A stretch of 64,000 nucleotides of DNA from contig NW_027361784.1 in NCBI RefSeq assembly GCF_039654945.1, positions 21,204,001-21,268,000 on the forward strand. Direction: 5' to 3'. The position numbers and the translations under genes were made by a program. This stretch comes from Dendrobates tinctorius. Its lineage: Eukaryota. This document shows, piece by piece, positions 12,455-48,771 of the stretch. The notes beneath the pieces were generated by a model. That model saw only the letters and a list, made by a program, of their open reading frames with translations, made no database searches and was not told the DNA's origin. How positions within the stretch are numbered: the stretch's first letter is position 1; every line of letters begins with the position of its first letter.

Positions 12455-13924
12455 ATGCCCAACTTTGCAGGGGCTTCTTGTCCTCCCTCTAAGCCCACCT
12501 TCATTTATTACGCCTGCGCCCGCTGTAAGAGCAAGTGGTCCTCAGGTCAGCAGTCTCCCCTCTGCCCGTCCTGCAGTCATTCCACCATATCTGCCCCACA
12601 GGAGCACTCTAATGCCGATTATGAGAGCACACTCCTCCCTCCGGAATGGGCTGTTGCCATGTCTGTCGGTCTGAGACCTGACAAAAATATCATAGTCCCT
12701 CGTCCAGGCTCTGGAACGCCTTCTGAATTTATCTGCTGCGACCAGTGCGCCGAACGCCTCCCAGGGTGATTCGCATTCCCCTGACCACGACCTTCACAGG
12801 GACAAATCGGAAAAAGAGTCTAGAAAGCGGACTCTCCCTAGCTCCTCATCCAGTTCCCCGGCCCCTCTACACCTTCCAGGATGCCCTCCTCTCCCCGTTC
12901 CCCCCTCGGAGGAGGAGGCGGCATTTGGGTTGGAAGTGGATTCCCAGTCCGGGTCCAACTCTGATTCAGACCAGGCTTCCAAGATACAAGACATGGTTGA
13001 TAGACTTATTTTGGCTATTAGTCAAACCCTTAACTACAAGAGGACGAGGTTCCCGCTCCAGAACACTCTGTTTCCTTTAAACGGGTAAAACGTCCTCCCC
13101 AGACCTTTCCCAATCATAAAGGGTTTGAGGCGACCATGGCCAAACACTGGGAGTACCCCTAGAAGCGCTTCCCTGGAAGGAGACAGATATCTTTTATCCC
13201 TTTAGCCCAGCAGAGTCTCCCAAGGTGGACCTCCCCAGTCTCTCGCCTGGCCTCAAAGACAGTTCTGTCTCTCCCAGATAGTGTGTCTCTCAAAGACGCC
13301 ACGGACAGGCAGATTGAGTCTTTGGCCAAAAAGGTCTTTGACGCGACCGGTGCTTCCCTCTGTCCCAGCTTCGCTTCCACCTGGGTGGCGAAGTCTATTT
13401 CTGCCCAGGCTAAAATCCTCCTCCAGGGCATTGTAGCTGCAGCTCCTCCGGAAGAACTCGCAGATTTGGCGTATCAGAAAGCTCACGCCGACAAGTATCT
13501 TCTGGCCGCTTCTTTGGATGCGGCCGGCTGTTCCGCCAGGGCAAGCAGCAACATCATTGCCATACGCCGCATCCTCTGGTTAAAGGCATGGAATGCAGAC
13601 TCTACCTCTAAAAAATCTCTCACCAGCCTGGTTTTTCAGGGGTCCAGGCTCTTCGGTCCAAATTAGACCAAATAATCGCCACCAGGAAGAAGAGTACTTC
13701 TCTTCCTCAGTCTAAGCCTAAACGTCTCTTCAAAAGGAAAGGGCCCCTGCCCTTCAACTCCTTTTCGACCTTTCTCCTCTTCAGGGGCTTCCTCCCAACA
13801 GGACCCCTCATCCACCCCAAGGGAGACGAGGAAACCATCCTTCAAACCATCACCTTACTGGAGGCCAAAGGGAAGTTCCTCCAGGCCCTCTGGGTCCCGC
13901 TCCCACAGGTTTTCCTCTAAATGA
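12455..13924 (+). pseudogene. DIRS B gag-like ORF1 (Cys-rich N-terminus, LAP2alpha-like C-terminus), frameshifted
   Basis: Fragments CARC...CPSC...PPEWAVAMS and SLKDATDRQIE...IRRILWLKAWNADSTSKKSL; TGA at 13922-13924. Confidence 0.85.
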
Positions 13925-16830
13925 CGGGTCACCCTCACCTTCAAATTTTTCCAGGATGGGAGGCCGCCGCCTTCTATTCAGGGACGCATGGTTGCCTGGG
14001 TCAGGGACGTAGTCACGTCTGGTTACAAGATCGACTTTTCTTCCACCCCAGGAAGACCCTTCTTTCTCTCTCGCCTGTCAAAACTTCCCTGTCAAGCTCC
14101 AGGGGTTCTTCAGGCGGTCTCTTCCCTTCTACACTCAGGCGTAATCTTGCCCGTTCCTCGAAACGAGCGGTTTTCGGGTTTTATTCCAATCTGTTCGTAG
14201 TTCCAAAAAAAGACGTGTCCATCTGTCCGATCTTGGACCTCAAACTGTTGACCCGCCACATTCGGACCCGCCACTTCAGAATGGAGTCCTTACGTTTGGT
14301 GATCGCCTACATGGAACTGGGGGAGTTTCTTTGCTCTGTAGACATTCAGGATGCTTATCTTAACATTCCTGTTTGTGTGCAGCATCAGAGATTCCTTAGG
14401 TTCGCAATCCAGGAGGACCATCAGTTTACGTCCCTTCCTTTTGGCCTGGCGTCTGTCCCCAGGGTCTTCACAAAGGTCATGGCAGCAGTCATGGCTATCC
14501 TTCACTCCAACGGGATTCTCATAATCCCTTACCTGGACGATTTCCTGATCAAAAGACCATCCCGCCGGGACTGCGACCAGAGTCTTCAGATCACCTTGGA
14601 CACTGTGGTCCGTCTTGGCTGGATAGTCTGCAAAGCGAAATCCTCCCTGTTTCCATCTCAGCGCCTGGTGTTTCTGGGCATGGAGTTCGATACGGCCCAG
14701 GCCCGTGTCTTCCTTCCGGAGGAAAAGTTTGCGTCTCTCTGCCAGGGAATTCGCTCTTTAAGGCAACCATTCCCTCTCCCCTTACGATCTTGCATGAGGG
14801 TACTGGGGAAGATGGTTGCCGCCATGGAAGCCGTGCCTTATGCCCAGTTCCACACCCGTCCTCTTCAGCTGGCTCTCTTGTCTGTTTGGGACAAGAAAAC
14901 TGTCTCCCTGGACCGACCGGTTCTTCTACCTCTCAAAGTGAGGCAATCTCTGATTTGGTGGATGCTATCCGCCTCTGTCCTGCGCGGGAGGTCCTTTCTC
15001 CCTCCCCGGTGGCAGGTCATCACCACCGACGCCAGTCTCCTCGGTTGGGGAGCGATCTTCCTTCATCACACAGCGCAGGGTCGCTGAAACGTTCAGGAAG
15101 CCCTCCTCCCCATCAATCTCTTGGAGATCAGAGCAATCTTTCTTGCCCTTCTCCGCTGGCAGTCCCTCCTCGCAGGCAAGCCGGTCCGCATTCAGTCGGA
15201 CAACACCATGGCCGTGGCTTGCATAAACCACCAAGGCGGGACTCACAGCAAACAGGTCATGTCAGAGGTGATAAAGGTTCCTCGATGGGCCAAACATTAT
15301 GTCCCTGCCATATCAGCCATTCACATTCCGGGGGTGGAAAATTGGGAATCCGATTTTCTGAGTCGTCAGGGCATCACATCAGGCGAGTGGTCTCTCAACT
15401 CTGCCGTCTTCAACCAAAATATGTCAGAGATGGGGAACTCCGGACGACGATCTCATGGCGTCCCGGGCAAACCACAAGGTTCCTCTGTTCGTAGCCAGGT
15501 CCTGGGACCCGAGGGCCATCGGCTGAGATGCTCTAGTGATCCCGTGGTCCCAGTTTCAGCTGCCTTATCTTTTTCTGCCTCTCCCCTTGATTCCGAGAGT
15601 CGTAAAAAAGATAAAGCCAGAAGGTGTTCCCGTTCTTCTGATTGCTCCAGACTGGCCGAGACGGGCCTGGTATGCGGAGCTGATGAACATGCTCGCAAAC
15701 GTTCCCTGGAAGCTTCCAGACCGACCAGATCTTCTCTCGCAAGGCCCCCTCTTCCACCCAAGTTCTCACTCTTTGAGTTTAACTGCATGGCTGTTGAGGC
15801 TGCATTCCTGAAGGAAGCGGGTTTCTCTACCAGGGTCATCCAGACCATGATTAAGGTGAGGAAACCAGCATCCTCACGTATCTACCACAGATGTTGGAAA
15901 GCCTTCTTCATGTGGTGTGAGGATAACAGCTTGTTTCCAATGTACTTTTCCCTTCCGTCCATCCTAGGCTTTCTTCAAGGGGGCCTTGACTCGCATCTCT
16001 CGCTCAGTACCCTTAAGGGTCAGGTATCCGCTCTGTCAGTCCTCTTCCAGAGAGATTTGGCTTCCCTTTCTCAGGTGAAGACTTTCATTCAGGGAGTCGC
16101 CCACCTGACGCCACCTTACCATCCTCCGGTAGATCCATGGGATCTCAACCTCATTCTCGACGTTCTTCAGCATGCCCCCTTTGAGCCCATCCAGGATATC
16201 TCGTTCTCTCTCCTGTCTTGGGTTGTGGCCTTCCTAATCACCATTACATCTGTCAGGAGGGTTTCTGAGCTAGCTGCACTGTCGTGTCGTTCTCCTTACC
16301 TGATTCTGCACCAGGACAAGGTAGTCCTCCGACCTGTTCCTACCTTTTTGCCCAAGGTGGTTTCTGCCTTTCACATCAATGAAGACATCGTCCTTCCTTC
16401 TCTATGTCCTTCTCCAGTTCATCCACTGGAAAAATCCCTTCACAAACTTGATTTGGTCAGAGCTATTCCAGTCTACCTTTCTAGGACTGCTTCTTTTCGT
16501 CAGTCCGATTCCCTTCTGGTCATCTCTGAAGGTCGTTGAAAGGGGCTCCCAGCTTCTAAGTCCACGATTGCCCGTTGGATTCGCTCGGCGATATTGGAGG
16601 CATACCGCATTCATGACAAACAGCCTCCTCCGGGAGTGAAGGCTTCCCTCCAGGCTGTGGGAGCTTCCTGGGCTGTTAGTCAATAGTCTTCGGCCTTGCA
16701 GATCTGCAAGGCTGCAATCTGGTCATCTTTACACACCTTTACAAGGATTTACAAGGTTAATACCCAAGCCTCGGCTGATGCAGGGGCCTGGGTAGGAAGG
16801 TACTGCAGGCCGGCGGTTTCTCACCGGCCA
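13923..16830 (+). pseudogene. DIRS B RT/RNase H/MT-like and tyrosine recombinase ORFs, disrupted
   Basis: YSNLFVVPKK, LPFGL, YLDD, TTDAS, QSDN, APDWP; YR SVRRVSEL and FLPKV; stops and frameshifts present. Confidence 0.9.
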
Positions 16831-17929
16831 AGATGCCTTTCTCTTTACTTATATTTTCCTTTTCCCACCCTTGGGACTGCTATTGGACGTCCCATGGTTA
16901 TCTTTGTCCCCCAATGAAGCAATAAAGAAAGAGGGATTTTTGGTACTTACCGTAAAATCTCTTTCTTGGAGCCTTCATTGGGGGACACAGCACCCTCCCT
17001 AATTTTTGTACCATTGTTGGCCTATGTGCCCTTGTTTTGGGTTGGTACATATGTTGGGTTTTTGGCCGCTTCTCCTACTGCTTTAACACCAACCGAGTAG
17101 CTTAGTGCCTGTCGGTGGGTGTATACTGCTGGAGAGGAGCTATTTTTTTTTTTTTGCCTAATGTCAGCGCCTCCTAGCGACAGCAGCATACACCCCATGG
17201 TTATCTGTGTCCCCCAATGAAGACTCCAAGAAATAGATTTTACGGTAAGTACCAAAAATCCGTCTTTCTCCTTCGTCTCATTGGGGGACACAGAGACTGT
17301 GGGTGTGTGCTTCTGCCGTCTGGAGGCCGACACTAAGTGTACAAAAAAAGAGTTAGCTCCTCCTCCGCCGCATACACCCTCGCCCCTAGGCCGGGCGTAA
17401 CTCAGTTTTTGCTTAGTGTCTGATGGAGGCACACGCAGTCTGGAGTTCCAGACTAGGTTTTTTTTTTTTTTTTTTTTTTTTTTCTATGAAGATAAGACAG
17501 GGGCGACGGATCCTATAGAGAGGATCCGATCTCCCCAAATCACCAACGGGCGACCACGTGTGAGTAACCCTCCACGTGTCCTCTCCCGCACCGAGGGACA
17601 CATCTGGGTCTTTTTTCCAGACATCTATTTTTTAACGAAAGAGGGGCAACGCGTCCTGATTAGAGGACTCGGTTTCCCCACAACTTCATCAGGCGAGCAC
17701 GCGTGAGCAGAACCAGTGGTCAGCCTCCACGTTGTTCCTCTCCTACAACAGCAGTGTATGGAGGTCCCGTCCACCCCTTGGTTGTGAGTCCAGGGGGCTG
17801 AATCGGAGGCGCAGGTGAGAGCGCGCCCAGGAGCGGGGGATCCGGTACAGGTGCGACAGAGCCCCCCCCCCCCCCCCCCTCCTCGCCTGCACGGCGGATG
17901 GTCCTGCTCACCTTTTAATATATGGGGGA

Positions 17930-18260
17930 GCCGCTCCTGGAGCGCACCGCAAGTTGGCGCTGGTGAGTAGCGGTAGCCACGGCGTTGCACCTGGGCTCCG
18001 CACGCCGCGTGTATCGGAGCGCGGCCGGAAGCCCGCCGGCGGCCGCGGCCCCGCTGCAGCAGGAGGCCGCGAGATCGCGCGAGGCCGCGCCCCGACTTCC
18101 GGTGGTAGGCTGACTTCCGGTGGTAGCCGGAAAGCCCGCCCGCTGACGCGGCGGTGGGATGCGGAGACGCGCGATATAGGGCAGGAGGTCAGACAAACGG
18201 CGGGCGCACAGATCCCGGGGAGACTTCCGCCCTAACACCTCGCATCCACGCAGGGGTACT
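17930..18260 (+). promoter_or_regulatory. CpG-rich internal promoter candidate of DIRS C
   Basis: Very GC/CpG-rich, with tandem ETS-type GACTTCCGG at 18094 and 18112; lies just upstream of gag. Comparable GC-rich tracts occupy the same position in copies B, D and E. Confidence 0.5.
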
Positions 18261-18368
18261 GCAGACAGGAGCCGGTGGGTGAGTGAACTCCGTTTGGAGA
18301 ACCGCGCTGCTTGTCAGGGAAGAGGTTACCCTCCTCCTCCTTCTACTCTGCCTTCAGCCTGTGCAAGT

Positions 18369-19811
18369 ATGTCTGCCAAAGGGAAGGCTCATTCTTTCCT
18401 TTACGCGGTTTGCGTGTCCTGTGGGGTCAGGCTGCCAAAGGCACAGGCGGGTAAATTTTGTGAGGCCTGTCAGTCGGAGCGCGCCCAGGAGCCCCCCACT
18501 GTTTCTGAACCCAGGGGTCAGGACCCTCCGGAATGGGCGGTGTCCTTATCGCAGTCTATGCTGTCCCTTACAAGGGCAATTGAATCCCTTCAGGGCCCGG
18601 GCAGGAACAGGGAGGGGGGTCTGCCGGCGGAGGAGAGCTCGTCCTCGTCTCAGGACCCTCCAACCATTAGAGGTCGCTCCAGTACCAGGCAGGCTCATAT
18701 CAAGAGAGTTCGTTCCCCGTCGGCCGGACCCTCCGGGGCTTCGGCGGCGGGTAGTAGGGCATCCCGTTCCCCGTCACTGAGCGCTGGGAGCGATCAGGAT
18801 GAAGGAGAGGAGGAAGAGGCCTGGAATCTAGAAAGTCTGGGGTTCCAGGATTCGGTGGACAGTCTTATTGAGGCAGTCAACCAGACATTAGAGATCGAGG
18901 ACGATGCGCCCACAGTCTCAGGTCACAAGGTCTCTTTTAAGAAATCCAAGCGACCACATAGAAGATTTGCCACGCATCCGGAGTTTGAGGAGCTAGTCCA
19001 GAAACATAGAGATCATCCGGATAAGCGTTTTGCAATGCAAAAAGCGCTGCAGGCAAAGTATCCGTTTCCTCCTGAGCTCCATAAGGCTTGGGTAGAGTCG
19101 CCAGTAGTGGATCCTCCGGTATCACGTTTAGCATCAAGATCGCTATTGTCAATACCCAGTGTTTCCTCTATAAAGGACCCAACTGATCGCCTCATGGACG
19201 GGCTGGCCCGCTCGGTATATGAGGCAGCGGGGTCGGCTCTGGCCCCCTCCTTTGCGGCGACTTGGGTGGCTAAGGCCATGGTTTCGTGGGGGGACGCTTT
19301 GTATAAGGCCCCCCAGGACAGGGATCTGCCCGCGGAGGTCTTAGAAGTGGCAAATCAGATGTCAGGAGCAAGTGATTATCTTGTCAGCGCCTCACTGGAC
19401 GCGGCCGAGTGTTCGGCGGTGGCGGCGGCGAATGCGATCGCCATTAGGCGTGCATTATGGCTGAGGCTGTGGAAAGCGGATTCTATCTCTAAAAAATCCT
19501 TAACCTCATTGCCGTTTCAGGGCAGTCGACTATTCGGTGAGAAGCTGGATAGGCTTATCTCAGAAGCCACAGGGGGGAAAAGTAGTTTCCTTCCGCAGCA
19601 GAGAAGTTGCCCGGCATTCAGGCAAACGCAAAGGCGTTTTCGACCCTTTCGTAGCCCCTGGGGGGGGACTTCGGCCAGGGCATACTCCTCCGCAAACGAT
19701 GGCCAGAGTAGGGAGAAACAAGTCTCTTACAGGGCCAATCCGCTGGGTAGAGGCCGAGGCCATTTACCCAGAGCGAGGGGGGCCAAGCCCCAAAAACCTC
19801 CAGCTAAATGA
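18369..19811 (+). CDS. DIRS C gag-like ORF1 (480 aa from first ATG)
   Basis: CVSC...CEAC zinc-binding motif, PPEWAVSLSQSM, LAP2alpha-like region VDPPVSRLA...IRRALWL...W.AD..SKKSL; ends AAA TGA. Confidence 0.92.
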   Translation: MSAKGKAHSFLYAVCVSCGVRLPKAQAGKFCEACQSERAQEPPTVSEPRGQDPPEWAVSLSQSMLSLTRAIESLQGPGRNREGGLPAEESSSSSQDPPTIRGRSSTRQAHIKRVRSPSAGPSGASAAGSRASRSPSLSAGSDQDEGEEEEAWNLESLGFQDSVDSLIEAVNQTLEIEDDAPTVSGHKVSFKKSKRPHRRFATHPEFEELVQKHRDHPDKRFAMQKALQAKYPFPPELHKAWVESPVVDPPVSRLASRSLLSIPSVSSIKDPTDRLMDGLARSVYEAAGSALAPSFAATWVAKAMVSWGDALYKAPQDRDLPAEVLEVANQMSGASDYLVSASLDAAECSAVAAANAIAIRRALWLRLWKADSISKKSLTSLPFQGSRLFGEKLDRLISEATGGKSSFLPQQRSCPAFRQTQRRFRPFRSPWGGTSARAYSSANDGQSREKQVSYRANPLGRGRGHLPRARGAKPQKPPAK

Positions 19812-21717
19812 CTCGAGGCACTTCGTACCTACGGACGACAGAGTGGGCGGACGCCTACTAAGGTTCAGCCACGTTTGGGTCGCAGTGACACGCGACACTT
19901 GGGTGGCAGAACTTGTATCGTCCGGGTACAAGATAGAGTTTGTCGGACGGCCACCACAGCGATTCTTCCGTTCGCGACTCTCCAAAACAGATTCGCAGGC
20001 GGAGAGTTTGTTACAGGCTGTAACGTCGCTACAGCACAAGGGGGTCATCGCCCCAGTGCCGCAGGGCGAAGAGTCGCAGGGGTTTTACTCCAATCTTTTT
20101 TCGGTCCCCAAAAAAGACGGGACTGTGAGGCCGGTTCTGGATCTAAAGATCCTAAACAGATTCATCAGGGTCAGGCGATTTCGGATGGAATCTCTCCGCT
20201 CGGTCATTGCAGCCATGGATCCAGGGGAATTCCTGGCCTCAATCGATGTGCAGGATGCATATCTGCATATTCCGATATTCCCCCCACACCAGAGGTTCCT
20301 GCGATTCGCGATCGGAGGACGTCACTTCCAATTCGTGGCTCTGCCCTTCGGTCTGGCCACTGCCCCCAGAGTCTTTACAAAGATAATGGCGGTGGTCATG
20401 GCCATCCTGCATGCACGGGGCATAACGGTGTTACCTTACCTGGACGACCTTTTGGTAAAGGGGCCGTCGTTTCAGGAGTGCCAGGACAATGTCGGTATTA
20501 CTCTGGATACCCTGGCCCGTCTGGGCTGGCTGATCAATTGGAGCAAGTCGTCCTTGGTTCCAGCCCAAAAAATCGTGTTCCTAGGCATGATTTTCGACAC
20601 CTCCCGGGGGCTGGTGATCCTCCCTCGGGACAAGGCGCAGAAAATCAAGCAGGGGATACGGAACCTTCTACAGCCGGGCTCCAGATCCATCCGGTATGGC
20701 ATGAGTGTGTTGGGCAGAATGGTGGCGGCGATAGAAGCAATCCCGTTTGCCCAGTTCCATCTCCGTCCGCTTCAGCATGCGCTCTTGGCAGCATGGGACC
20801 GGAGGCTGCTGTCTCTCAGTCATCGGTGCAAGTTGTCTCCGCTGGTACGGGGTTCACTCCGGTGGTGGACTCGCGACTCGTCGCTGGTCCAGGGGAAACC
20901 TTTTCCCCCGGAACAATGGTTGGTGGTGACGACCGATGCAAGCCTGCAAGGTTGGGGAGCAGTTTTCCAGAGTCACATAGCCCAGGGGCGGTGGTCAGTT
21001 CAGGAGATAGTTCTCCCGATCAACATTCTGGAGATACGGGCAATACGATTGGCCCTACAACATTTCCAGTGTTTCCTGAGACACCGGCCGGTGCGCATCC
21101 AGACGGACAATGCTACAGCGGTAGCATATGTCAACCATCAAGGGGGCACGCGCAGCCAGGCAGCCATGCGCGAGGTCGGACTGGTACTAAGTTGGGCGGA
21201 GAAGAACCGCGTGGTAATTTCAGCGGTGCACATTCCAGGAGTCGAAAACTGGGCGGCAGATTTCCTCAGCCGACAGGGGGTCGCGGCAGGGGAATGGTCC
21301 CTGCACCCCGAGATCTTTCAGCAGATCTGCCAACGGTGGGGGACACCAGACGTGGACCTTATGGCATCCAGAGAGAATGCCAAAGTACTAAGGTTTGTCG
21401 CTCGATCCCTCGATCCGCAGGCGATCGCAGCAGACGCGCTGGTGCTCCCGTGGAGCCAGTTTCGTCTCCCGTACTTGTTCCCCCCGCTGCCGCTGCTTCC
21501 AAGAGTTATCAGGAAAATAAGGAGGGAAAAGGTTCCAGCAATTCTGCTGGCCCCAGACTGGCCCCGGCGGGCCTGGTACGCAGATCTGGTCCAACTAGTG
21601 GTGGACGTACCCTGGCGTCTTCCAGATCGGCCGGACTTACTGTCCCAAGGGCCGATCTACCATCCGAACTTAGGGGCCCTGTGTTTGACGGCGTGGCCAT
21701 TGAATCTTGGCTGTTAA
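19810..21717 (+). CDS. DIRS C reverse transcriptase / RNase H / methyltransferase-like ORF (+1 frame relative to gag; true start unknown, frame open from 19537)
   Basis: VGGRL, FYSNLFSVPKK, DVQDAYLH, LPFGL, YLDD, TTDAS/LEIRA/QTDN/ADFLSR (RNase H), DLMAS...YLFPP...LAPDWP (MT-like). Confidence 0.95.
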   Translation, partial: DSRHFVPTDDRVGGRLLRFSHVWVAVTRDTWVAELVSSGYKIEFVGRPPQRFFRSRLSKTDSQAESLLQAVTSLQHKGVIAPVPQGEESQGFYSNLFSVPKKDGTVRPVLDLKILNRFIRVRRFRMESLRSVIAAMDPGEFLASIDVQDAYLHIPIFPPHQRFLRFAIGGRHFQFVALPFGLATAPRVFTKIMAVVMAILHARGITVLPYLDDLLVKGPSFQECQDNVGITLDTLARLGWLINWSKSSLVPAQKIVFLGMIFDTSRGLVILPRDKAQKIKQGIRNLLQPGSRSIRYGMSVLGRMVAAIEAIPFAQFHLRPLQHALLAAWDRRLLSLSHRCKLSPLVRGSLRWWTRDSSLVQGKPFPPEQWLVVTTDASLQGWGAVFQSHIAQGRWSVQEIVLPINILEIRAIRLALQHFQCFLRHRPVRIQTDNATAVAYVNHQGGTRSQAAMREVGLVLSWAEKNRVVISAVHIPGVENWAADFLSRQGVAAGEWSLHPEIFQQICQRWGTPDVDLMASRENAKVLRFVARSLDPQAIAADALVLPWSQFRLPYLFPPLPLLPRVIRKIRREKVPAILLAPDWPRRAWYADLVQLVVDVPWRLPDRPDLLSQGPIYHPNLGALCLTAWPLNLGC

Positions 21718-22736
21718 CACAGGCAGGATTCAGACGCGATGTGGCGGCCACGATGGTGAGTGCCCGAAAGCCTTCCTCGGCGAGGGTGTATCATCGAACT
21801 TGGGAAGTGTTTTTCCGTTGGTGTAGGGATCGTGAAGTGGCTCCTCTGGTTTTTTCGATCCCCAACGTACTGGCTTTTCTACAGGCAGGGCTGGACGCAG
21901 GGTTGGCTCCGAGTTCCCTCAGAACGCAAATCTCGGCCCTGTCGGTACTTTTCCAACGAAAAGTCGCTTCCGTCTGGCAGGTTAGGACGTTTATGCAGGG
22001 GGTCGCACATTTAGTACCCCCCTATAAGGCGCCGACGGAATCATGGGACCTGAACTTGGTGCTCAGAGCCCTTCAGGAGGCCCCTTTCGAACCATTGCAA
22101 GAGGTCCCCTTGCCTTACCTGTCCAGAAAAGTCGTTTTTCTAGTAGCCATAACGTCTATTAGGCGGGTTTCGGAATTGGCGGCCTTATCTTGTAAACCAC
22201 CGTTCCTAACCTTTTATAAGGATAAGGTAGTTTTAAGGCCAGCCCCCCCCTTCTTGCCGAAGGTTGTGTCTGCATTTCATATCAACGAAGACATCGTCTT
22301 ACCCTCGTTTTGCCCGGCACCGGTGCACAGGGTAGAGAAGGCTTTGCACACCCTGGATCTGGTAAGAGCCCTTAGGAGGTATGTGACGAGGACGGCGCCA
22401 TTCCGCCGGACAGACTCTCTATTCGTGGTTCCAGAGGGACGGCGGAAGGGGCTCGCGGCGTCCAGAGCGACTTTGGCCAGATGGGTTCGCCTGACGGTCC
22501 AAGAAGCTTATCAAATCAGTGGCACGCCGGTTCCGGCAGGGATCAGGGCTCACTCGGCACGGGCAGTGGGGGCCTCATGGGCACTACGACACCAGGCTTC
22601 AGCGGAGCAGGTATGCAAAGCAGCTACCTGGTCCAGTTTACATACGTTTATCAAACATTATAACGTACATACCCAGGCATCCTCGGATGCAAGCCTGGGA
22701 AGAAAGATTCTCCAGGCAGCAGTTGCGCACCTCTAA
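19812..22736 (+). CDS. DIRS C tyrosine recombinase ORF, in frame with gag and overlapping the whole RT ORF
   Basis: No stop from 19812 to 22736; C-terminal ~340 aa carry SIRRVSEL (R), FLPKV (K), AHSAR (HxxR) and FIKHY (Y). Confidence 0.93.
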   Translation, partial: LEALRTYGRQSGRTPTKVQPRLGRSDTRHLGGRTCIVRVQDRVCRTATTAILPFATLQNRFAGGEFVTGCNVATAQGGHRPSAAGRRVAGVLLQSFFGPQKRRDCEAGSGSKDPKQIHQGQAISDGISPLGHCSHGSRGIPGLNRCAGCISAYSDIPPTPEVPAIRDRRTSLPIRGSALRSGHCPQSLYKDNGGGHGHPACTGHNGVTLPGRPFGKGAVVSGVPGQCRYYSGYPGPSGLADQLEQVVLGSSPKNRVPRHDFRHLPGAGDPPSGQGAENQAGDTEPSTAGLQIHPVWHECVGQNGGGDRSNPVCPVPSPSASACALGSMGPEAAVSQSSVQVVSAGTGFTPVVDSRLVAGPGETFSPGTMVGGDDRCKPARLGSSFPESHSPGAVVSSGDSSPDQHSGDTGNTIGPTTFPVFPETPAGAHPDGQCYSGSICQPSRGHAQPGSHARGRTGTKLGGEEPRGNFSGAHSRSRKLGGRFPQPTGGRGRGMVPAPRDLSADLPTVGDTRRGPYGIQRECQSTKVCRSIPRSAGDRSRRAGAPVEPVSSPVLVPPAAAASKSYQENKEGKGSSNSAGPRLAPAGLVRRSGPTSGGRTLASSRSAGLTVPRADLPSELRGPVFDGVAIESWLLTQAGFRRDVAATMVSARKPSSARVYHRTWEVFFRWCRDREVAPLVFSIPNVLAFLQAGLDAGLAPSSLRTQISALSVLFQRKVASVWQVRTFMQGVAHLVPPYKAPTESWDLNLVLRALQEAPFEPLQEVPLPYLSRKVVFLVAITSIRRVSELAALSCKPPFLTFYKDKVVLRPAPPFLPKVVSAFHINEDIVLPSFCPAPVHRVEKALHTLDLVRALRRYVTRTAPFRRTDSLFVVPEGRRKGLAASRATLARWVRLTVQEAYQISGTPVPAGIRAHSARAVGASWALRHQASAEQVCKAATWSSLHTFIKHYNVHTQASSDASLGRKILQAAVAHL

Positions 22737-22802
22737 TCAGGGGCGCAAATTAGCATGGATTGGGTGAGCTAAGATCCCGCCCAGAGGACTGCTTTAGGAC
22801 GT

Positions 22803-22905
22803 CCCACAGTCTCTGTGTCCCCCAATGAGACGAAGGAGAAACATGGATTTTTGTGAGTACTCACCGTAAAATCCTTTTCTCCGAGACGCTCATTGGGGGA
22901 CACAG
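22803..22905 (+). other. DIRS C internal complementary region (ICR)
   Basis: Reverse complement of the left terminus joined through AAA to the reverse complement of the right terminus, i.e. an antisense copy of the circle junction. Confidence 0.95.
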
Positions 22906-24971
22906 CACCCACCCTATCAGCCAGTTGGCATTTACTTATTTTGAGTTTTACAAATCCTTGTACAAGGTTTAGGGTGGCACCCTTTTTCAGACATATACTT
23001 TCTTGCCTGAGTTTAAAGCGCGTTCTCCTACTGCTTATGCACTAAACTGAGTTACGCCCGGCCTAGGGGCTAGGGTGTATGCGGCGGAGGAGGAGCTAAC
23101 TCTTTTTTTGTACACTTAGTGTCGGCCTCCAGACGGCAGAAGCACACACCCACAGTCTCTGTGTCCCCCAATGAGCGTCTCGGAGAAAAGGATTTTACGG
23201 TGAGTACTCACAAAAATCCATGTTTTAGCTAAAAATCCACTCATTTAAAGTAAAAACAAAATTGCTCGCCACATGTTTATATCATTTAAGATAAATGGAA
23301 AGCAGTCACCGCAAGGAATAGTCATGCGCAAGGAGGCACATGGGACGTTACTGAAGGTCCGTGCCTACTTTCTATACACTACACTGTGTCACTTTAAAGG
23401 GGTGTTCCCAACTCAGACACACTCGCTTATTTTGGGAATGCGTTGGGAATATCCCTTTAATGAGCGAATTGATCAAATGCTGGCTGGACGGCGTGGGGGA
23501 GCCGGGGGTCACATATTTATTATGGAGTTTCCAGTAGTTATAAATTAATCCTTACTTAGCACCTATAAATCATCCAGTTTATTCAGAGCCGCCTGTTTAC
23601 ACGTCTGAGCTGGAAAGCTCCCAAACGATCAGGACAAAATGAACAGACTCACACCAGTTTTCACTAAGAAGGTCAACGAAAAAATATTCAATTAATCCCT
23701 TCACTAAGAGCCATTTAATTGCATAAATTGGCATGACTGCTTTTTTTTTTTCTTTTAGCGTAATGTAAATGAAGCAAATGGAACAAGGTGCTTATTATTA
23801 GGGGAAAGGGGCCCTTTAAATTATCGTGACTAGACCTGAGGTCGTTGTAAAAACTTACTGCAAATGTTCCTGAAAAATTATATATAAGAACGAAAGCAGG
23901 CTGCTACGGTCGGGGGGCGAAAGGGAAAAGGAGTATCAGCGGACAGACTGCATGATAAGACTATTCAATGTTGGCGTTCTTCAACCCTTTGTGTCTTGTT
24001 CACACATTGCACTTTTTTTTTTCCGTTGAAGTTTTTCCAACGACTTTTTTAAGTGTTGGTTTTCGTTCTGAAATCTCATGCACACGCTGCTTATTTTTTT
24101 TCCTTGTGGATTTGGACCAGAATAGCATTTTAAAAAAAATTAATATCTGTGGTACATTAATTCGATAAGCTTTTTTTGAAGATTTTTTTTCCCCCATTCA
24201 AATGAACAGGGGGAAAAAAAAAACGTGCATTTTCCAAAGCACTTTTCCTGCCAACACTCTTTGCCGGACGAGTTGTTGTTTTATAAGACACCATTCACTT
24301 TACTATATATTGCGTTGAAATGGTGATTTAAAAAAAAAAAAAAAAAAAATCATCATTTCACTTTTTTTCATTGTTACGATGCACTGGCTATAATAGTCTC
24401 CTGGTCAGTAAGGTGGTGTCGATACCAACAATGTATAGTTGCTGTTTTAAAAAATGTTTAACTTTGCAAAAAGTAAATTGAAAAAAATGTGGTTGGGCTC
24501 GTGATTTTTCCATACCTATATATATTTTTTTAATTTTTACATCATCATTGCTGCTCTGGCCTGTTGTACTTTCATTTTCTTGTCAATGCATTTTATGTGA
24601 GAGTAAGAGGAAAAGTCAATTTTGCATTTGGATTTATCTTTTCTTTTCTTTTACATTTGCATGGGGCCGTTGACTTGCATTTTGCAAATTTGATCTGCAA
24701 AACGGATCAAAGCTAGATATATTTCCTAGTTTTTATACATGTACAGTTGTTGTGCCTAAATGGGGAAACAAAAAATGTGAACAGGGCTCATTAATTCTAA
24801 TGGTTCGATGATCTTTCTGTAAAATTCATATCCAAGAATGTGATGTGTGAAAGAGCCCTTACAGAGTTATGCTGTCCATATACTGTGGTATGCCATATAG
24901 ACCATTAGTAAAAAGGGTAATAGTTGGCTCAACATTTTGAATCCTTAACATTATTCTTTATACAACATAGT

Positions 24972-45347: not shown

Positions 45348-46919
45348 ATGCCGGGCTCAAGGAAGAGAACCAGGCAGGAATGTTTCTATGCATTCTGCAC
45401 AGCCTGCAAAGCCACGCTCCCTAGTGGTAGCACATATCCGCACTGCCGGGACTGCATCCAGAACTCTGGGTCAGAACACAAGGGAGTCCCTACTGACGCT
45501 TCAGTGTCACAGGCCACGCCGGAATGGGCAACTCAGATGTCTCAGTCTATGTCACAGTCCATAGACAACCTAACTGCCACATTGCTGCAAGCTCTGCAGA
45601 GTCGGGCCCCGGCTATGGACGGTACACAGCAAACGGACAGCTTGTCTCAGGAACATGCTGCTTCCGACTCTCACAGACGTAAGCGGACCCACAGGTCTCG
45701 ATCACCTGAGTCGCACTATAGCACAAGGTCGTCCCCCTCCAGGGAGAGACAGCGTCATTCTAGGTCTCCTGGGCAGTCCCCTGCCACAGACAGACAGTGC
45801 AATTTACCACAGGGATCCCCCACCACAGAAGACCCCCGCCCCAGGTCGCCCTCCAGGGATCTCTTTAGCGAGGCACAGGATTCGGAGGGCATCTGTGACT
45901 CCGACTCAGATAACGAAATGGTCAGGTCCGTGGTACCTTCTCCCCCTAGCAATACAGCGCTAGTTGAGGACATAATTTCTGCCATTCATCTGGTGCTAAA
46001 AATTCCAGAGTCTGCCCCGGAAGTCCCAGAACATAGGATTTGCTTCGAAAGTGTTCAGAAACCACCTAAGGTCTTCCCTAATCACCATGAGTTTGAGAAA
46101 ATACTTACCAAACAGTTTGCGCAGCCTGAGAAAAAATTCGCTAATAGCAAATATTTGGAAGCGAAGTACCCCTTCCCACAGAAAGACACCAAACAATGGA
46201 CAGATCCACCTGAAGTGGACCCTCCGGTTTCTAGGCTAGCAGCGCAGACTTTACTCTCTCTGCCGGATAGCTCAACCCTCAGGGACGCAGCAGACCGGCA
46301 AGTAGAACGCATGGCTCGTTCTATTTTCGAAGCGGCAGGCGCCTCTCTGGGCCCTGCGTTTGCTTCAGTTTGGGCAGCCAAGGCCATCCTGGCTTGGGCC
46401 AAAAAACTACAGGAGGGTCTTCAGGCTTCAAATCCTGAGCTCTCGGACCAAGCGGTCCAGATAGCAGTGGTAGCAGACTACATGATTCATGCAGCCCTGG
46501 ATTCCGCCAGAGGTGTAGCGGGAATAGCATCAAACGCCATCACGATCCGACGCATCCTCTGGCTGCGAGAATGGAAAGCGGATGCGGCCTCAAAGAAGTC
46601 CCTCACGCGACTTCCGTATTTTACTGGAAGACTTTTCGGCGAAAAGTTGGACACCATGATAGCCAATGCCACTGGGGGTAAGAGTACCTCTCTCCCTCAA
46701 CTAAAACCGAAACGCACGTTTAAACGAAGAAACCAGACGCGATTCCGATCCTTTCGGAATTCCTTGGGCTGGTCCGTTTCGCGCCCAGTGCAAAACCGTA
46801 ACCGTTCTCCACGCAGAGACAACCCACGGACACAGCAGCGACCGGACAGGGCTTGGCAGTCGAAAGCAGGCCAAGCGAAACCCAAGGGAGGAAAACCTCA
46901 GAACTTCGCTTCATCATGA
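45348..46919 (+). CDS. DIRS D gag-like ORF1, 523 aa, intact
   Basis: CTAC...CRDC, TPEWATQMSQSM, LAP2alpha-like C-terminal region; ends TCA TGA. Confidence 0.92.
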   Translation: MPGSRKRTRQECFYAFCTACKATLPSGSTYPHCRDCIQNSGSEHKGVPTDASVSQATPEWATQMSQSMSQSIDNLTATLLQALQSRAPAMDGTQQTDSLSQEHAASDSHRRKRTHRSRSPESHYSTRSSPSRERQRHSRSPGQSPATDRQCNLPQGSPTTEDPRPRSPSRDLFSEAQDSEGICDSDSDNEMVRSVVPSPPSNTALVEDIISAIHLVLKIPESAPEVPEHRICFESVQKPPKVFPNHHEFEKILTKQFAQPEKKFANSKYLEAKYPFPQKDTKQWTDPPEVDPPVSRLAAQTLLSLPDSSTLRDAADRQVERMARSIFEAAGASLGPAFASVWAAKAILAWAKKLQEGLQASNPELSDQAVQIAVVADYMIHAALDSARGVAGIASNAITIRRILWLREWKADAASKKSLTRLPYFTGRLFGEKLDTMIANATGGKSTSLPQLKPKRTFKRRNQTRFRSFRNSLGWSVSRPVQNRNRSPRRDNPRTQQRPDRAWQSKAGQAKPKGGKPQNFASS

Positions 46920-48771
46920 CTCGCGACCTCCGGAAGACACCCCACCAGTAGGCGGCCGACTTTTACTCTTTCAGCAAGTGTGGCTGCCTATTACAGAAGA
47001 CAGGTGGGTCAGGGAAATAGTGTCTTCTGGATACAAGATAGCGTTCACTTCCGTTCCACCGAACCGGTTCTTCCTTTCTATTCCTCCAACACCACCAGAA
47101 AAGGCTCGTGCTTTCCACCAAGCGGTTTCCTCTCTCCTTCAATCAGGAGTTGTGGTGCCGGTTCCCGCGAACGAGAGATTCCGAGGATTCTACTCAAATT
47201 TGTTCGTAGTCCCCAAGAAAGGAGGCGGCGTCCGACCCATACTGGACCTAAAACAGCTCAACAATTACGTACGGGTCCGTCATTTCCGCATGGAGTACCT
47301 CCGGTCCATCATTGCATCCATGGACCAGGGAGAATACCTCGCCTCCATAGACATACAGGATGCGCATCTCCACATACCAATTGCTCCCGCCCACCAAAGG
47401 TTTCTCAGGTTCGCGGTCAACCAAAACCACTACCAGTTTGTCGCCCTTCCGTTCGGACTCGCCACGGCTCCAAGAACGTTCACCAAAGTCATGGCGGCCA
47501 CCATGGACGTCCTGCACTCAAGAGGCATCCTAGTCGTCCCGTACCTGGACGACCTCCTCATCAAGTCTCCCACTTTCAAAGACTGCGAGGTCAGTGTCTC
47601 AATCACAATAGACACACTGAGTCGCCTGGGATGGCTAGTCAACCTACAGAAATCGTCGACTATCCCAACTCGGACTCTAAGATTCCTGGGAATGGTATTT
47701 GACACCGCCAGGGGCCTGGTGCTCCTTCCCAAGGACAAGACACTGGCCATCCATCTGGGAGTTCGCACACTCCTTCGCAGTCCTCCTCGATCTCTCCGGT
47801 TTGCCATGAGAGTCCTCGGCAGGATGGCAGCAGCAATAGAGGCAGTGCCATTTGCCCAGTTTCACCTCAGGGTCCTTCAACTAGCCTTAATCAGATCTTG
47901 GGACAGGAACCCCTTCTCCCTCGACAGGTCCCTGCATTGGTGGCTCAAACCAACCTCGCTTACACGAGGGAAGCCCTTTCTCTCAGGACAATGGAAGATC
48001 CTGACTACCGATGCAAGCCTGACAGGCTGGGGGGCGGTGCACCTACATCACAGGGCACAGGGCAAGTGGTCACCGAGGGAAGTGACATTGCCCATCAATG
48101 TTCTGGAAATCAGGGCCTTTCATCACTTGCTTGCAGCCTCGCACATACGGATACAGTCGGACAATGCCACGGCTGTGGCATACGTGAACCACCAAGGCGG
48201 GACCCGCAGCGCCCAGGCGATGAGAGAAGTGGCTCATATCCTCCGCTGGGCGGAAGACACGAGGTCGGTACTTTCTGCAGTACACATTCCGGGTGTAGAA
48301 AACTGGGAAGCCGACTTCCTCAGCAGGCAAGGAATGGACTCGGGGGAGTGGTCTCTCCATCCCGAGATTTTTTACCAGATCTGTCAACCCTGGGGAACCC
48401 CGGAGGTGGACCTAATGGCATCCCATCTCAATACCAAGGTCCCCAATTTCATGGCCAGGACACACGACCCGCGGTCGCTCGGAGCGGATGCCCTGGTCCA
48501 GGACTGGTCCCAGTTCCAACTCCTGTACATTTTTCCACCCCTCCCCCTAATCGCCAGGGTCGTGAGGAAGATCAAGCAAGAGGGAGTTCCGACCATCCTC
48601 ATCGCGCCAGACTGGCCCAGACGTACATGGTACGCCGACATCGTCCAACTTACGGCAGACGCCCCCTGGCGTCTACCTGACCGTCACGACCTTCTGTCTC
48701 AAGGTCCGTTCTTCCACCAGAATTCAGGGGCTCTCAATTTGACGGCATGGCCCTTGAAACCTGGATTCTAA
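46918..48771 (+). CDS. DIRS D RT/RNase H/MT-like ORF (+1 frame; no ATG before the RT core; two in-frame deletions)
   Basis: VGGRL, FYSNLFVVPKK, LPFGL, YLDD, TTDAS, QSDN, YIFPP, APDWP. Confidence 0.88.
   Translation, partial: DSRPPEDTPPVGGRLLLFQQVWLPITEDRWVREIVSSGYKIAFTSVPPNRFFLSIPPTPPEKARAFHQAVSSLLQSGVVVPVPANERFRGFYSNLFVVPKKGGGVRPILDLKQLNNYVRVRHFRMEYLRSIIASMDQGEYLASIDIQDAHLHIPIAPAHQRFLRFAVNQNHYQFVALPFGLATAPRTFTKVMAATMDVLHSRGILVVPYLDDLLIKSPTFKDCEVSVSITIDTLSRLGWLVNLQKSSTIPTRTLRFLGMVFDTARGLVLLPKDKTLAIHLGVRTLLRSPPRSLRFAMRVLGRMAAAIEAVPFAQFHLRVLQLALIRSWDRNPFSLDRSLHWWLKPTSLTRGKPFLSGQWKILTTDASLTGWGAVHLHHRAQGKWSPREVTLPINVLEIRAFHHLLAASHIRIQSDNATAVAYVNHQGGTRSAQAMREVAHILRWAEDTRSVLSAVHIPGVENWEADFLSRQGMDSGEWSLHPEIFYQICQPWGTPEVDLMASHLNTKVPNFMARTHDPRSLGADALVQDWSQFQLLYIFPPLPLIARVVRKIKQEGVPTILIAPDWPRRTWYADIVQLTADAPWRLPDRHDLLSQGPFFHQNSGALNLTAWPLKPGF

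What the first reader, a model, noticed from the sequence alone, without database searches (positions are those of the whole stretch)
19795..19860. One leaky stop, three proteins? Conserved recoding-like site at the DIRS gag stop
Seen in all four full-length families: gag ends in TGA-C (B AAA TGA CGG 13922; C AAA TGA CTC 19809; D TCA TGA CTC 46917; E AAG TGA CGG 57760, minus). In C and D the recombinase frame continues directly after the stop in the gag frame. In all four the RT frame is +1, with GAC overlapping the stop, a fixed ~11-12 codons before GGR; D has no ATG ahead of the RT core. A hairpin begins 7-10 nt downstream (C: CACT-TCGT..ACGA..AGTG; E: CCCACC-TGGAA..TTCCA-G-GGTGGG; weaker in B and D). 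Established: UGA-C, especially UGA-CGG plus a 3' stem, drives readthrough in alphaviruses, and +1 shifts at slow stops occur in antizyme and RF2. Overlapping DIRS ORFs are known, but I do not know their expression mechanism to be resolved. Inference: termination gives Gag, readthrough gives Gag-linker-recombinase, and a +1 shift gives Gag-RT.
Basis: partly seen in the sequence, partly recalled or inferred. Interest (0 to 1): 0.82.

Follow-up and report, generated by a model that had tools for sequence, protein, structure and literature searches.

The report
Leaky gag stop in DIRS retrotransposons
In these frog jumping genes, and in relatives from many other animals, the first gene ends in a weak stop signal followed by about 1,000 stop-free codons that lead to the integration enzyme. 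The elements therefore probably make their enzymes by programmed mis-reading of one messenger RNA, which would explain an ORF overlap known since the 1980s.

Summary
The sequence facts are real: four diverged DIRS1-like copies end gag in TGA-C, RT is in the +1 frame with GGR 11-12 codons downstream, and in intact copy C the gag frame stays open for 974 codons to the tyrosine recombinase (YR).

In 75 unrelated metagenome loci and 6 named animal genomes this is the main architecture:
- 58 of 71 loci have RT = gag+1.
- In 48 of 52, the first stop upstream of YR is the gag stop.

Synonymous permutation expects 1239 stops in that frame across the RT ORF; 7 are seen. Gag stops are TGA 45, TAG 8, TAA 0, with +4 C in 66%. 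Control stops in the same elements are not biased this way. Readthrough to Gag-linker-YR is well supported.

The +1 shift at the stop is not supported for the frog copies. They carry an in-frame influenza PA-X-type YCC_UUU_CGN site about 54 codons upstream. Codon choice there (TTT 21 : TTC 1) shows selection. Lineages lacking it have UCC, CCC, UUU or CUU directly before the stop.

The 3' hairpin is not conserved. RNA data could not test splicing. Other windows of this genome gave the same idea (s1-376831 and others).

The parts
17253..23225 (+). Copy C, an intact DIRS1-like element. Inverted terminal repeats lie at 17277-17408 and 23044-23175. The internal complementary region lies around 22803-22905.
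   Evidence: the arms are 132 nt and 99% complementary. 17253-17303 is 96% complementary to 22803-22853.
18369..19811 (+). gag ORF of copy C. The first ATG is at 18369 and the frame is open from 18180. It has a LAP2alpha-like domain and a hydrophilic Arg/Gly/Pro-rich tail.
   Evidence: PF11560, E 1e-13.
19635..19652 (+). Two in-frame UUU_CGN motifs in the gag tail: CGU_UUU_CGA and CCC_UUU_CGU. These are the candidate +1 frameshift sites into the RT frame, 57 and 54 codons before the gag stop.
   Evidence: Codon-choice test. The motif is established in PMC3498833 and PMC5052127.
19809..19812 (+). Gag stop UGA plus +4 C in the context AAA_UGA_CUC. This is the candidate programmed readthrough site and the centre of the finding.
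   Evidence: Stop and context statistics.
19504..21717 (+). RT/RNase H/MT-like ORF in the +1 frame relative to gag. The conserved protein starts at VGGRL, 12 codons after the gag stop. The stretch upstream of 19809 is open but not conserved as protein.
   Evidence: RVT_1 E 1.9e-18, RT_RNaseH.
19812..21731 (+). The 'linker': 640 codons in the gag frame overlapping the whole RT ORF. It has no stop, its first ATG lies more than 300 codons in, it is Gly/Ser/Pro/Arg-rich, and it matches no Pfam family.
   Evidence: Permutation: 0 stops seen, 15.7 expected, minimum 5 in 200 permutations.
21732..22736 (+). Tyrosine recombinase domain in the gag frame, starting 5 codons after the RT stop. The R...HxxR...Y residues are readable.
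   Evidence: Phage_integrase E 0.0019 and the N-terminal SAM-like domain E 0.012, both below the Pfam cut-off; homologous YR in 70 or more loci.
46749..46757 (+). Copy D: in-frame UCC_UUU_CGG, 55 codons before its gag stop.
46917..46920 (+). Copy D gag stop in the context UCA_UGA_CUC. The gag frame after it has stops at 47700 and 48678 within the RT overlap, and the YR reading frame is broken near 49150. This is a decayed copy.
13760..13768 (+). Copy B: in-frame CCU_UUU_CGA, 53 codons before its gag stop.
13922..13925 (+). Copy B gag stop in the context AAA_UGA_CGG. This is a decayed copy, with frame breaks in gag and just after GGR.
57757..57760 (-). Copy E gag stop in the context AAG_UGA_CGG. 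This is a decayed copy. It is followed by the only convincing hairpin of the four copies.
   Evidence: (z -2.08).

Best explanation
The 3' end of gag in DIRS1-like retrotransposons is a translational recoding cassette that yields three products from the full-length RNA.

1. Most ribosomes terminate at a deliberately weak stop (UGA-C here) and make Gag.
2. A few percent read through the stop. They translate about 640 codons of a low-complexity 'linker', encoded in the -1 frame of the RT gene, and reach the tyrosine recombinase. The product is Gag-linker-YR.
3. A few percent shift +1 and make Gag-RT/RH/MT.

In the frog copies B, C and D the +1 shift most likely occurs at an in-frame YCC_UUU_CGN site (19644-19652 in C), about 54 codons upstream of the stop, not at the stop. 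In other lineages that lack UUU_CGN, a shift-prone codon (UCC, CCC, UUU or CUU) directly abuts the stop, and there one codon may serve both events.

Shown: the sequence architecture, and the selection that maintains it. Inferred: that ribosomes actually read through and shift, the efficiencies, and that the fusions are functional.
For: Window:
- Copy C is intact, with 99% complementary ITRs. It has gag, RT in the +1 frame, and a 974-codon open gag-frame extension ending in YR.

Survey of 75 metagenome loci chosen only by RT similarity:
- 58 of 71 have RT = gag+1.
- YR frame = RT-1 in nearly all.
- In 48 of 52, the first in-frame stop upstream of YR is the gag stop.
- The same architecture is present in Pseudophryne, Rhinatrema, Ranitomeya, Pogona and Patiria.

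The gag frame is kept open by selection:
- Synonymous permutation of RT codons expects 1239 gag-frame stops in 55 loci; 7 are observed. The other frame has 2371 observed against 2110 expected.
- In RT ORFs, TTT_AGR occurs 0 times and TTC_AGR 37 times. TTT_AGR would create a stop in the gag frame.

The stop looks leaky:
- Among 53 clusters, TGA 45, TAG 8, TAA 0; +4 is C in 66% and G in 21%.
- YR-ORF stops in the same loci are TGA 8, TAG 16, TAA 15. Fisher p is 5e-10 for TGA and 4e-7 for TAA.
- The last sense codon is enriched for CAA and AAA.

No other entry point is visible:
- No conserved ATG after the stop in the gag frame or the RT frame.
- YR starts right at, or before, the RT stop, with no slippery heptamer there.

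+1 shift site:
- In the gag tail, Phe before Arg(CGN) is TTT 21: TTC 1. Elsewhere the ratios are 53:55, 15:15 and 48:35. Fisher p is 2.7e-5. Named hosts give 13:2.
- UUU_CGN is an established +1 motif (PMC3498833, PMC5052127, PMC5644247).
- 25 rows have UUU_CGN, 15 have a shifty codon plus stop, and none have both.

Sister classes carry canonical -1 sites, UUUAAAC or AAAAAAC, exactly where the downstream frame opens. Translational recoding is therefore the family's habit.
Against: - No direct expression evidence. The only RNA/DNA run data were short Logan contigs of uncertain kind.
- The linker is 640 residues of weakly constrained sequence, with only a modest drop in synonymous divergence. 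That is an odd thing to translate and carry.
- 16 of 56 rows have neither recognised +1 motif.
- The mutual exclusion of the two +1 motifs is not significant once phylogeny is taken into account (sign test p about 0.125).
- TGA-C also encodes Asp in the RT frame, so part of the context bias could be a coding constraint. The distance from the stop to the RT core varies from 2 to 95 codons, which argues against this.
- No conserved 3' structure in the frog copies.
- Goodwin & Poulter 2001/2005 and Cappello 1985 could not be read, so prior statements may exist.
Confidence: 0.55

Rival explanations
1. The first reader's exact model applies to the frog copies too. The +1 shift into RT happens at the gag stop itself (AAA_UGA_C, UCA_UGA_C), as in antizyme, RF2 or Euplotes. 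The UUU_CGN motifs would then be only a by-product of an Arg/Phe-rich gag tail.
For: - The RT core always starts downstream of the stop, 4 or more codons away, and 11-12 codons away in all tetrapods.
- AAA is enriched as the last codon: 7 of 53 against 4.2% background.
- A slow stop favours both events.
- Lineages with UCC, CCC, UUU or CUU plus a stop exist.
Against: - All amphibian rows carry in-frame UUU_CGN upstream, with TTT preferred 13:2.
- The shift-prone last codons never co-occur with UUU_CGN.
- UCA and AAG (copies D and E) are not known shift-prone P-site codons.
Confidence: 0.13
2. RT and/or YR are made from spliced or subgenomic mRNAs, or by internal initiation. Neither ribosomal frameshifting nor readthrough is involved.
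For: - An NCBI gene model in Pseudophryne (P0012) joins gag to RT through a 103-nt GT-AG intron with a strong donor.
- Some retroelements, such as foamy viruses and plant Ogre elements, use splicing. This rests on general knowledge.
Against: - The donor is simply Gly-Glu codons (GGT_GAG), and it is not at the same place in copy C.
- Gene predictors invent short introns to bridge frame changes.
- No joint is shared between runs and none has GT..AG ends.
- Splicing or internal starts would not require the gag frame to be stop-free from the gag stop through 640 codons.
- No conserved ATG exists.
- Sister classes show classical -1 slippery sites.
Confidence: 0.12
3. The long gag-frame ORF is translated, but it is entered just after the gag stop by another route: termination-reinitiation, or a -1 shift back from the RT frame. 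The gag stop is not read through.
For: - ATGA overlaps the stop in B, C and D.
- Any entry within the first 20 or so codons after the stop would leave the same ORF pattern.
Against: - The ATG of ATGA is in the third frame and closes after 11-17 codons. E lacks it.
- The first gag-frame ATG is scattered from 7 to 542 codons after the stop.
- The TGA/TAG-only, +4 C/G and 5' CAA/AAA biases are those of leaky stops, and the other routes would not need them.
Confidence: 0.08
4. The open gag frame across RT is a compositional or codon-usage artefact and is not translated.
For: - The elements are GC-rich, 57-59% in copy C.
- The roughly 95-codon openness of the +1 frame upstream of the stop did turn out to be compositional: 45 stops observed against 49.8 expected.
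Against: - 7 stops observed against 1239 expected, with the protein and codon usage held fixed. No single permutation of any locus reached fewer than 5 stops.
- The third frame shows no deficit.
- The YR domain has no other means of expression.
Confidence: 0.02

Closest known systems
DIRS1-like 'long ORF overlap' (Piednoel et al. 2011, PMC3266345; Ribeiro 2019, PMC6681497; Xenopus survey, PMC9210276)
   Same: The same elements and the same overlap. The YR ORF overlaps pol extensively, and the catalytic YR lies in the non-overlapping 3' end. The overlap was reported in about half of the annotated families, including Xenopus and Anolis.
   Different: Those papers describe the overlap but give no expression mechanism. 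The words readthrough and stop codon do not occur in them. The following appear to be new relative to the literature I could read:
- the overlap begins exactly at the gag stop;
- it is maintained by selection;
- the stop is of the leaky kind.
Gammaretrovirus (MLV) gag-pol and alphavirus nsP3/nsP4 stop-codon readthrough (PMC3159437; UGA_CUAG genes, PMC4132726)
   Same: An in-frame extension behind a single UGA or UAG, with a +4 C or G preference. It gives a fixed low ratio of extended product and a Gag-enzyme fusion.
   Different: The extension first crosses about 640 codons that are the alternative frame of another gene before it reaches its enzyme domain. No conserved 3' structure is seen in the frog copies. 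The enzyme reached is a recombinase, not RT.
UUU_CGN +1 frameshifting (influenza PA-X UCC_UUU_CGU, amalgaviruses, ASXL1; PMC3498833, PMC5052127, PMC5644247)
   Same: An in-frame YCC_UUU_CGN inside an ORF1/ORF2 overlap with an open +1 frame, and TTT strongly preferred over TTC.
   Different: As far as I could find, this motif has not been described in a retrotransposon. Here it would make Gag-Pol. It is present in only about 45% of rows.
Antizyme (UCC_UGA) and RF2 (CUU_UGA_C) +1 shifts at a stop; Ty1/Ty3 +1 gag-pol
   Same: A subset of DIRS lineages end gag in UCC_UGA, CCC_UGA/UAG, UUU_UGA or CUU_UGA_C with RT in the +1 frame. Ty1 and Ty3 show that retrotransposons do use +1 shifts for Gag-Pol.
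   Different: The window's copies end in AAA, UCA or AAG, not those codons. No polyamine-type or Shine-Dalgarno-like stimulators are known or tested here. In DIRS the same stop would also have to be read through.

Membership tests
DIRS1-like tyrosine-recombinase retrotransposon (copy C) | Inverted terminal repeats plus an internal complementary region matching the termini | tested here: met
   132-nt arms, 99% complementary. 17253-17303 is 96% complementary to 22803-22853.
DIRS1-like tyrosine-recombinase retrotransposon (copy C) | gag, RT/RNase H (plus an MT-like region) and a tyrosine recombinase in place of an integrase or protease | tested here: met
   LAP2alpha-like gag, RVT_1, RT_RNaseH. 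Phage_integrase and the SAM-like domain are sub-threshold. HxxR and the catalytic Y are readable; 98% identity to a Dendrobates tinctorius RT model. The MT domain was not confirmed by any profile.
DIRS1-like tyrosine-recombinase retrotransposon (copy C) | Long pol/YR ORF overlap (present in about half of the families) | tested here: met
   19812-22736 is open and overlaps the RT ORF, which ends at 21717.
Programmed stop-codon readthrough | A conserved in-frame coding extension behind the stop, without its own start | tested here: met
Programmed stop-codon readthrough | Leaky stop identity and context (UGA or UAG, +4 C or G, 5' A-rich) | tested here: met
Programmed stop-codon readthrough | A 3' stimulatory RNA structure (needed for the MLV type and some alphaviruses; not for the UGA_CUAG type) | tested here: inconclusive
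   One search shows a class-wide modest excess (p 0.004). Searches show nothing conserved in tetrapods. Copies C and D are not above shuffles.
Programmed stop-codon readthrough | A measured readthrough product | not testable with these tools
   Needs reporters, ribosome profiling or mass spectrometry.
UUU_CGN +1 programmed frameshift | An in-frame UUU_CGN inside the overlap, with the +1 frame open from the site to the downstream domain | tested here: met
   for copies B, C and D and for 4 other amphibian or echinoderm elements. 19 of 49 metagenome clusters.
UUU_CGN +1 programmed frameshift | Selection on the shift site beyond the encoded amino acids | tested here: met
   TTT 21: TTC 1 before CGN in the gag tail, against about 1:1 elsewhere (p 2.7e-5); 13:2.
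UUU_CGN +1 programmed frameshift | A detected trans-frame product | not testable with these tools
   No expression data.
Antizyme/RF2-type +1 shift at a stop codon | A known shift-prone P-site codon (UCC, CUU, GCG, CCC) directly before the stop | tested here: not met
   The window copies end in AAA, AAA, UCA and AAG. The feature is met in 15 of 56 other rows.

The most novel reading that the evidence does not exclude
Across animal DIRS1-like elements, gag and the recombinase form one reading frame interrupted by a single programmed leaky stop. The 40-year-old 'long ORF overlap' would then be a readthrough conduit: about 640 codons kept open only so that ribosomes can reach YR. The result is a packaged Gag-tether-YR fusion. 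RT is taken from the same RNA by a PA-X-type or antizyme-type +1 shift. This would be the first retroelement to combine readthrough and +1 frameshifting, and in some lineages both would occur at one codon.
Probability: 0.4. Interest if true: 0.85.

Novelty: new variant of a known kind. Interest (0 to 1): 0.74.

Why it matters
DIRS elements are abundant in amphibian, fish, reptile and invertebrate genomes. How they express RT and the recombinase has never been resolved, and the extensive pol/YR overlap has been described repeatedly without explanation.

The evidence here turns that puzzle into a specific, testable model:
- a leaky UGA-C or UAG-G gag stop;
- a selection-maintained open frame behind it;
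- a defined +1 shift motif.

If confirmed, the model would:
- add a new recoding architecture, with two different recoding events on one retroelement RNA and a very long overlapping conduit frame;
- extend the UUU_CGN shift site from RNA viruses and ASXL1 to retrotransposons;
- improve annotation, since current ATG-only ORF calls and gene predictors mis-model these elements and fuse them into host genes.

Tried and rejected
1. **Openness of the RT (+1) frame upstream of the gag stop.** It is open for about 95 codons, against 11 for the third frame, and looked like evidence for an upstream entry. Synonymous permutation shows it follows from the hydrophilic gag tail: 45 stops observed against 49.8 expected. 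Only the gag frame is conserved as protein there. Dropped as evidence.
2. **A conserved 3' hairpin in the frog copies.** Not supported. Only a weak class-wide tendency remains.
3. **A -1 slippery site at the end of RT, to fuse RT to YR.** Absent: 7 of 55 loci have any heptamer. The YR N-terminus often overlaps the RT tail.
4. **Initiation codons for the gag-frame extension or for RT.** None is conserved.
5. **Reinitiation at the ATGA overlapping the stop.** It is in the wrong frame and that frame closes within 11-17 codons.
6. **Sequencing-run evidence.** Only short Logan contigs of uncertain kind were available. There were four single-contig joints without GT..AG ends. The data can neither show nor exclude splicing.
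7. **Pfam search of the 640-aa linker.** No family.
8. **PDB sequence search of YR.** Nothing significant.
9. **NCBI gag-RT fusion models.**
   - P0019 comes from a mutated copy with gag and RT fused in one frame.
   - P0012 uses a probable artefactual 103-nt intron.
10. **Strong purifying selection on the linker protein.** Only a modest drop in 4-fold-site divergence was found, and most pairs are saturated.
11. **Goodwin & Poulter 2001.** The paper could not be fetched.


Full report
**What is at the site.** The window holds four DIRS1-like tyrosine-recombinase retrotransposon copies of different families, with gag 35-50% and RT 51-58% identical between them.
- B lies at about 13040-16782.
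- C lies at 17253-23225.
- D lies at about 45327-49776.
- E lies at 58868-54886 on the minus strand.

The RT of C is 98% identical to a Dendrobates tinctorius protein model, so the genome is a dendrobatid frog.

C is intact.
- Its 132-nt terminal inverted repeats are 99% complementary, and it has an internal complementary region.
- Its gag carries a LAP2alpha-like domain, and its ORF2 carries RVT_1 and RNase H.
- B, D and E are decayed.

- The stops are AAA_TGA_CGG (B), AAA_TGA_CTC (C), TCA_TGA_CTC (D) and AAG_TGA_CGG (E).
- RT is in the +1 frame, with GAC overlapping the stop.
- GGR lies 11-12 codons on.
- D has no RT-frame ATG.
- In C the gag frame runs on for 974 codons without a stop to the end of the recombinase.

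**What was already known.** Reviews of DIRS1-like elements describe a 'long ORF overlap' between pol and the YR ORF in about half of the families. The catalytic YR lies in the non-overlapping 3' end (PMC3266345; PMC6681497; Xenopus families, PMC9210276).
- None of these papers mentions readthrough, a stop codon context or frameshifting as an expression mechanism.
- The large recoding review PMC5009743 does not mention DIRS in the part that is held.
- I could not read Cappello 1985 or Goodwin & Poulter 2001/2005.

**Comparative survey.** I fetched 80 metagenome contigs using an RT alignment only, so nothing about ORF layout was selected (RT 35-42% identical to C). I also fetched six named genomes.
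- Of 71 loci with the gag end on the contig, 58 have RT = gag+1, 5 have RT in frame with gag, and 8 have RT = gag-1.
- YR is in the RT-1 frame in almost all.
- In the main class, the first in-frame stop upstream of the YR domain is the gag stop itself in 48 of 52 loci. That leaves 640-730 open codons across the whole RT ORF.
- The same layout occurs in Pseudophryne, Rhinatrema, Ranitomeya, Pogona and the starfish Patiria. The oyster Pinctada belongs to the RT = gag-1 class.

**Is the open frame selected?** Yes. I permuted synonymous codons within each RT ORF, keeping the protein and codon usage fixed.
- The permutation expects 1239 gag-frame stops in 55 loci; 7 are observed.
- No permutation of any locus gave fewer than 5 stops.
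- Copy C has 0 stops against 15.7 expected, and D has 2 against 16.5.
- The third frame shows no deficit: 2371 observed against 2110 expected.

A visible trace of this selection is that RT ORFs never use TTT before AGR (0 against 37 for TTC), because TTT_AGR would create a gag-frame stop.

The translated linker is Gly/Ser/Pro/Arg-rich and matches no Pfam family. It is only weakly constrained at synonymous sites. It looks like a conduit or tether rather than a domain.

**Is the stop of the leaky kind?** Among 53 clusters (70% RT identity), gag stops are TGA 45, TAG 8 and TAA 0. The +4 base is C in 66% and G in 21%.
- Controls in the same loci: the YR-ORF stops are TGA 8, TAG 16 and TAA 15, and the RT-ORF stops are TGA 14, TAG 33 and TAA 7.
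- Fisher p is 5e-10 for TGA, 4e-7 for TAA, and 2e-4 for +4 C among TGA stops.
- CAA and AAA are enriched as the last sense codon.

These are the contexts known to weaken termination (PMC3159437, PMC4132726).
- Elements of the RT = gag-1 class end gag in TAG or TAA only. The three of them without a long overlap carry a UUUAAAC slippery site.
- The distance from the stop to the RT core varies from 2 to 95 codons. The TGA-C bias is therefore not a conserved RT residue.

**Other routes into the gag-frame extension.**
- No ATG is conserved after the stop. The first one lies 7 to 542 codons downstream.
- The ATG of the ATGA at the stop is in the third frame, which closes within 11-17 codons.
- YR starts at, or even before, the RT stop, and no slippery heptamer sits there. 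An RT-YR fusion by a -1 shift is therefore not the answer.

**How RT is reached.** Many elements have no ATG in the RT frame ahead of the conserved PVGGRL start, so a Gag-RT fusion is likely.

The roughly 95-codon openness of the +1 frame upstream of the stop is not evidence. It follows from the amino-acid make-up of the gag tail, and only the gag frame is conserved there.

I followed a lead from earlier notes of this scan (s1-376851, s1-376831) and tested the PA-X-type motif.
- B, C, D, Pseudophryne, Rhinatrema, Ranitomeya and Patiria all carry in-frame YCC_UUU_CGN-like sites in the gag tail. In C these are CGU_UUU_CGA and CCC_UUU_CGU at 19635-19652, 57 and 54 codons before the stop.
- Across 49 metagenome clusters, Phe before Arg(CGN) in the gag tail is TTT 21: TTC 1. 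The ratio is 53:55 for other Phe in the tail, 15:15 further upstream in gag, and 48:35 in RT (Fisher p 2.7e-5). Named hosts give 13:2.
- UUU_CGN is an established +1 shift site with about 1-2% efficiency (PMC3498833, PMC5052127, PMC5644247).

On an RT tree, 25 rows have UUU_CGN. Fifteen instead end gag in UCC, CCC, UUU, CUU or GGG directly before the stop, which is the antizyme/RF2-like arrangement. None have both, and 16 have neither.
- The exclusion is striking in raw counts.
- It reaches only p of about 0.125 with phylogenetically independent pairs.

For the frog copies in this window, an upstream UUU_CGN shift plus readthrough at the stop is the better reading.

**RNA structure.**
- Z-scores are C -0.61, D +2.20, B -1.62 and E -2.08.
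- RNAalifold finds no common pairs among eight tetrapod sites.
- Across the metagenome set, the 90 nt starting 5 nt after the stop fold somewhat better than control windows: mean z -1.53 against -0.65 to -0.97, p 0.004. A third of elements may therefore have a stimulator.

- Four joints were seen, each in one contig of one run and none with GT..AG ends.
- This neither shows nor excludes splicing.

Two NCBI models fuse gag and RT.
- One rests on a mutated Xenopus copy.
- The other uses a 103-nt GT-AG intron whose donor is simply Gly-Glu codons.

Splicing would not explain why the gag frame must be open from the gag stop onward.

**Variant layouts.**
- Five loci have gag-stop-RT in one frame, with the YR frame opening 12-35 codons before the stop. 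L007 has A_AAA_AAC exactly at that opening.
- Loci with RT = gag-1 and no long overlap have UUUAAAC where the RT frame opens.

The superfamily therefore uses recoding in several combinations. This supports a translational reading of the main class.

**Verdict.**
- Shown: the architecture, its breadth across animals, selection for an open gag frame through RT, a leaky-type gag stop, and selection for UUU_CGN in the gag tail.
- Inferred: that ribosomes read through to give Gag-linker-YR and shift +1 to give Gag-RT, the efficiencies, and the function of the fusions.

I put about 0.65 on readthrough and about 0.55 on the whole model as stated. Copies are described only as they stand.

Noticed in passing
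L037:1804-1820, L062:1712-1725, L079:1592-1640: DIRS-like loci of a minority class (RT = gag-1, no long YR overlap, gag stop TAG or TAA) carry the canonical -1 slippery heptamer UUUAAAC right where the RT frame opens.
   Followed up: partly
L007:2167-2275: Swapped arrangement. A_AAA_AAC sits at the opening of the long YR frame, 33 codons before the gag stop, and RT follows the gag TAG_G in the same frame. Here readthrough would give RT and a -1 shift would give YR.
   Followed up: partly
RT ORFs of L001-L080 and window 19810-21717: Phe before Arg(AGR) is never TTT (0 against 37 TTC) in RT ORFs. This is a codon-level footprint of stop avoidance in the overlapping gag frame.
   Followed up: yes
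L002, L013, L055, L058, L034, L021 (gag frame upstream of the stop): In several metagenome elements the gag frame is open for 900-1125 codons, about twice the frog gag. Either ORF1 is much larger or something is fused upstream.
   Followed up: no
proteins P0001, P0024, P0045, P0107 and many Ranitomeya 'ribonuclease H' models: Frog genome annotations fuse DIRS RT fragments into host gene models, for example 'sex comb on midleg-like 2', 'ELMO domain-containing 3', 'hnRNP A2/B1' and 'RYK'. These are likely annotation artefacts.
   Followed up: no
window 16891-17300: Just left of copy C lies a second set of DIRS-terminus-like repeats: inverted arms 16901-16990 and 17205-17294, 89% complementary.
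   Followed up: partly
window 22684-23040: In all four runs laid, the summed contig depth over the ICR and right terminus is 5-30 times that of the coding part. This suggests many truncated copies or solo termini of this family.
   Followed up: no
L081:6001-7900 (Xenopus laevis): A DIRS copy in which gag and RT are fused in one frame without a stop. NCBI took it for a gene (LOC121403038).
   Followed up: partly
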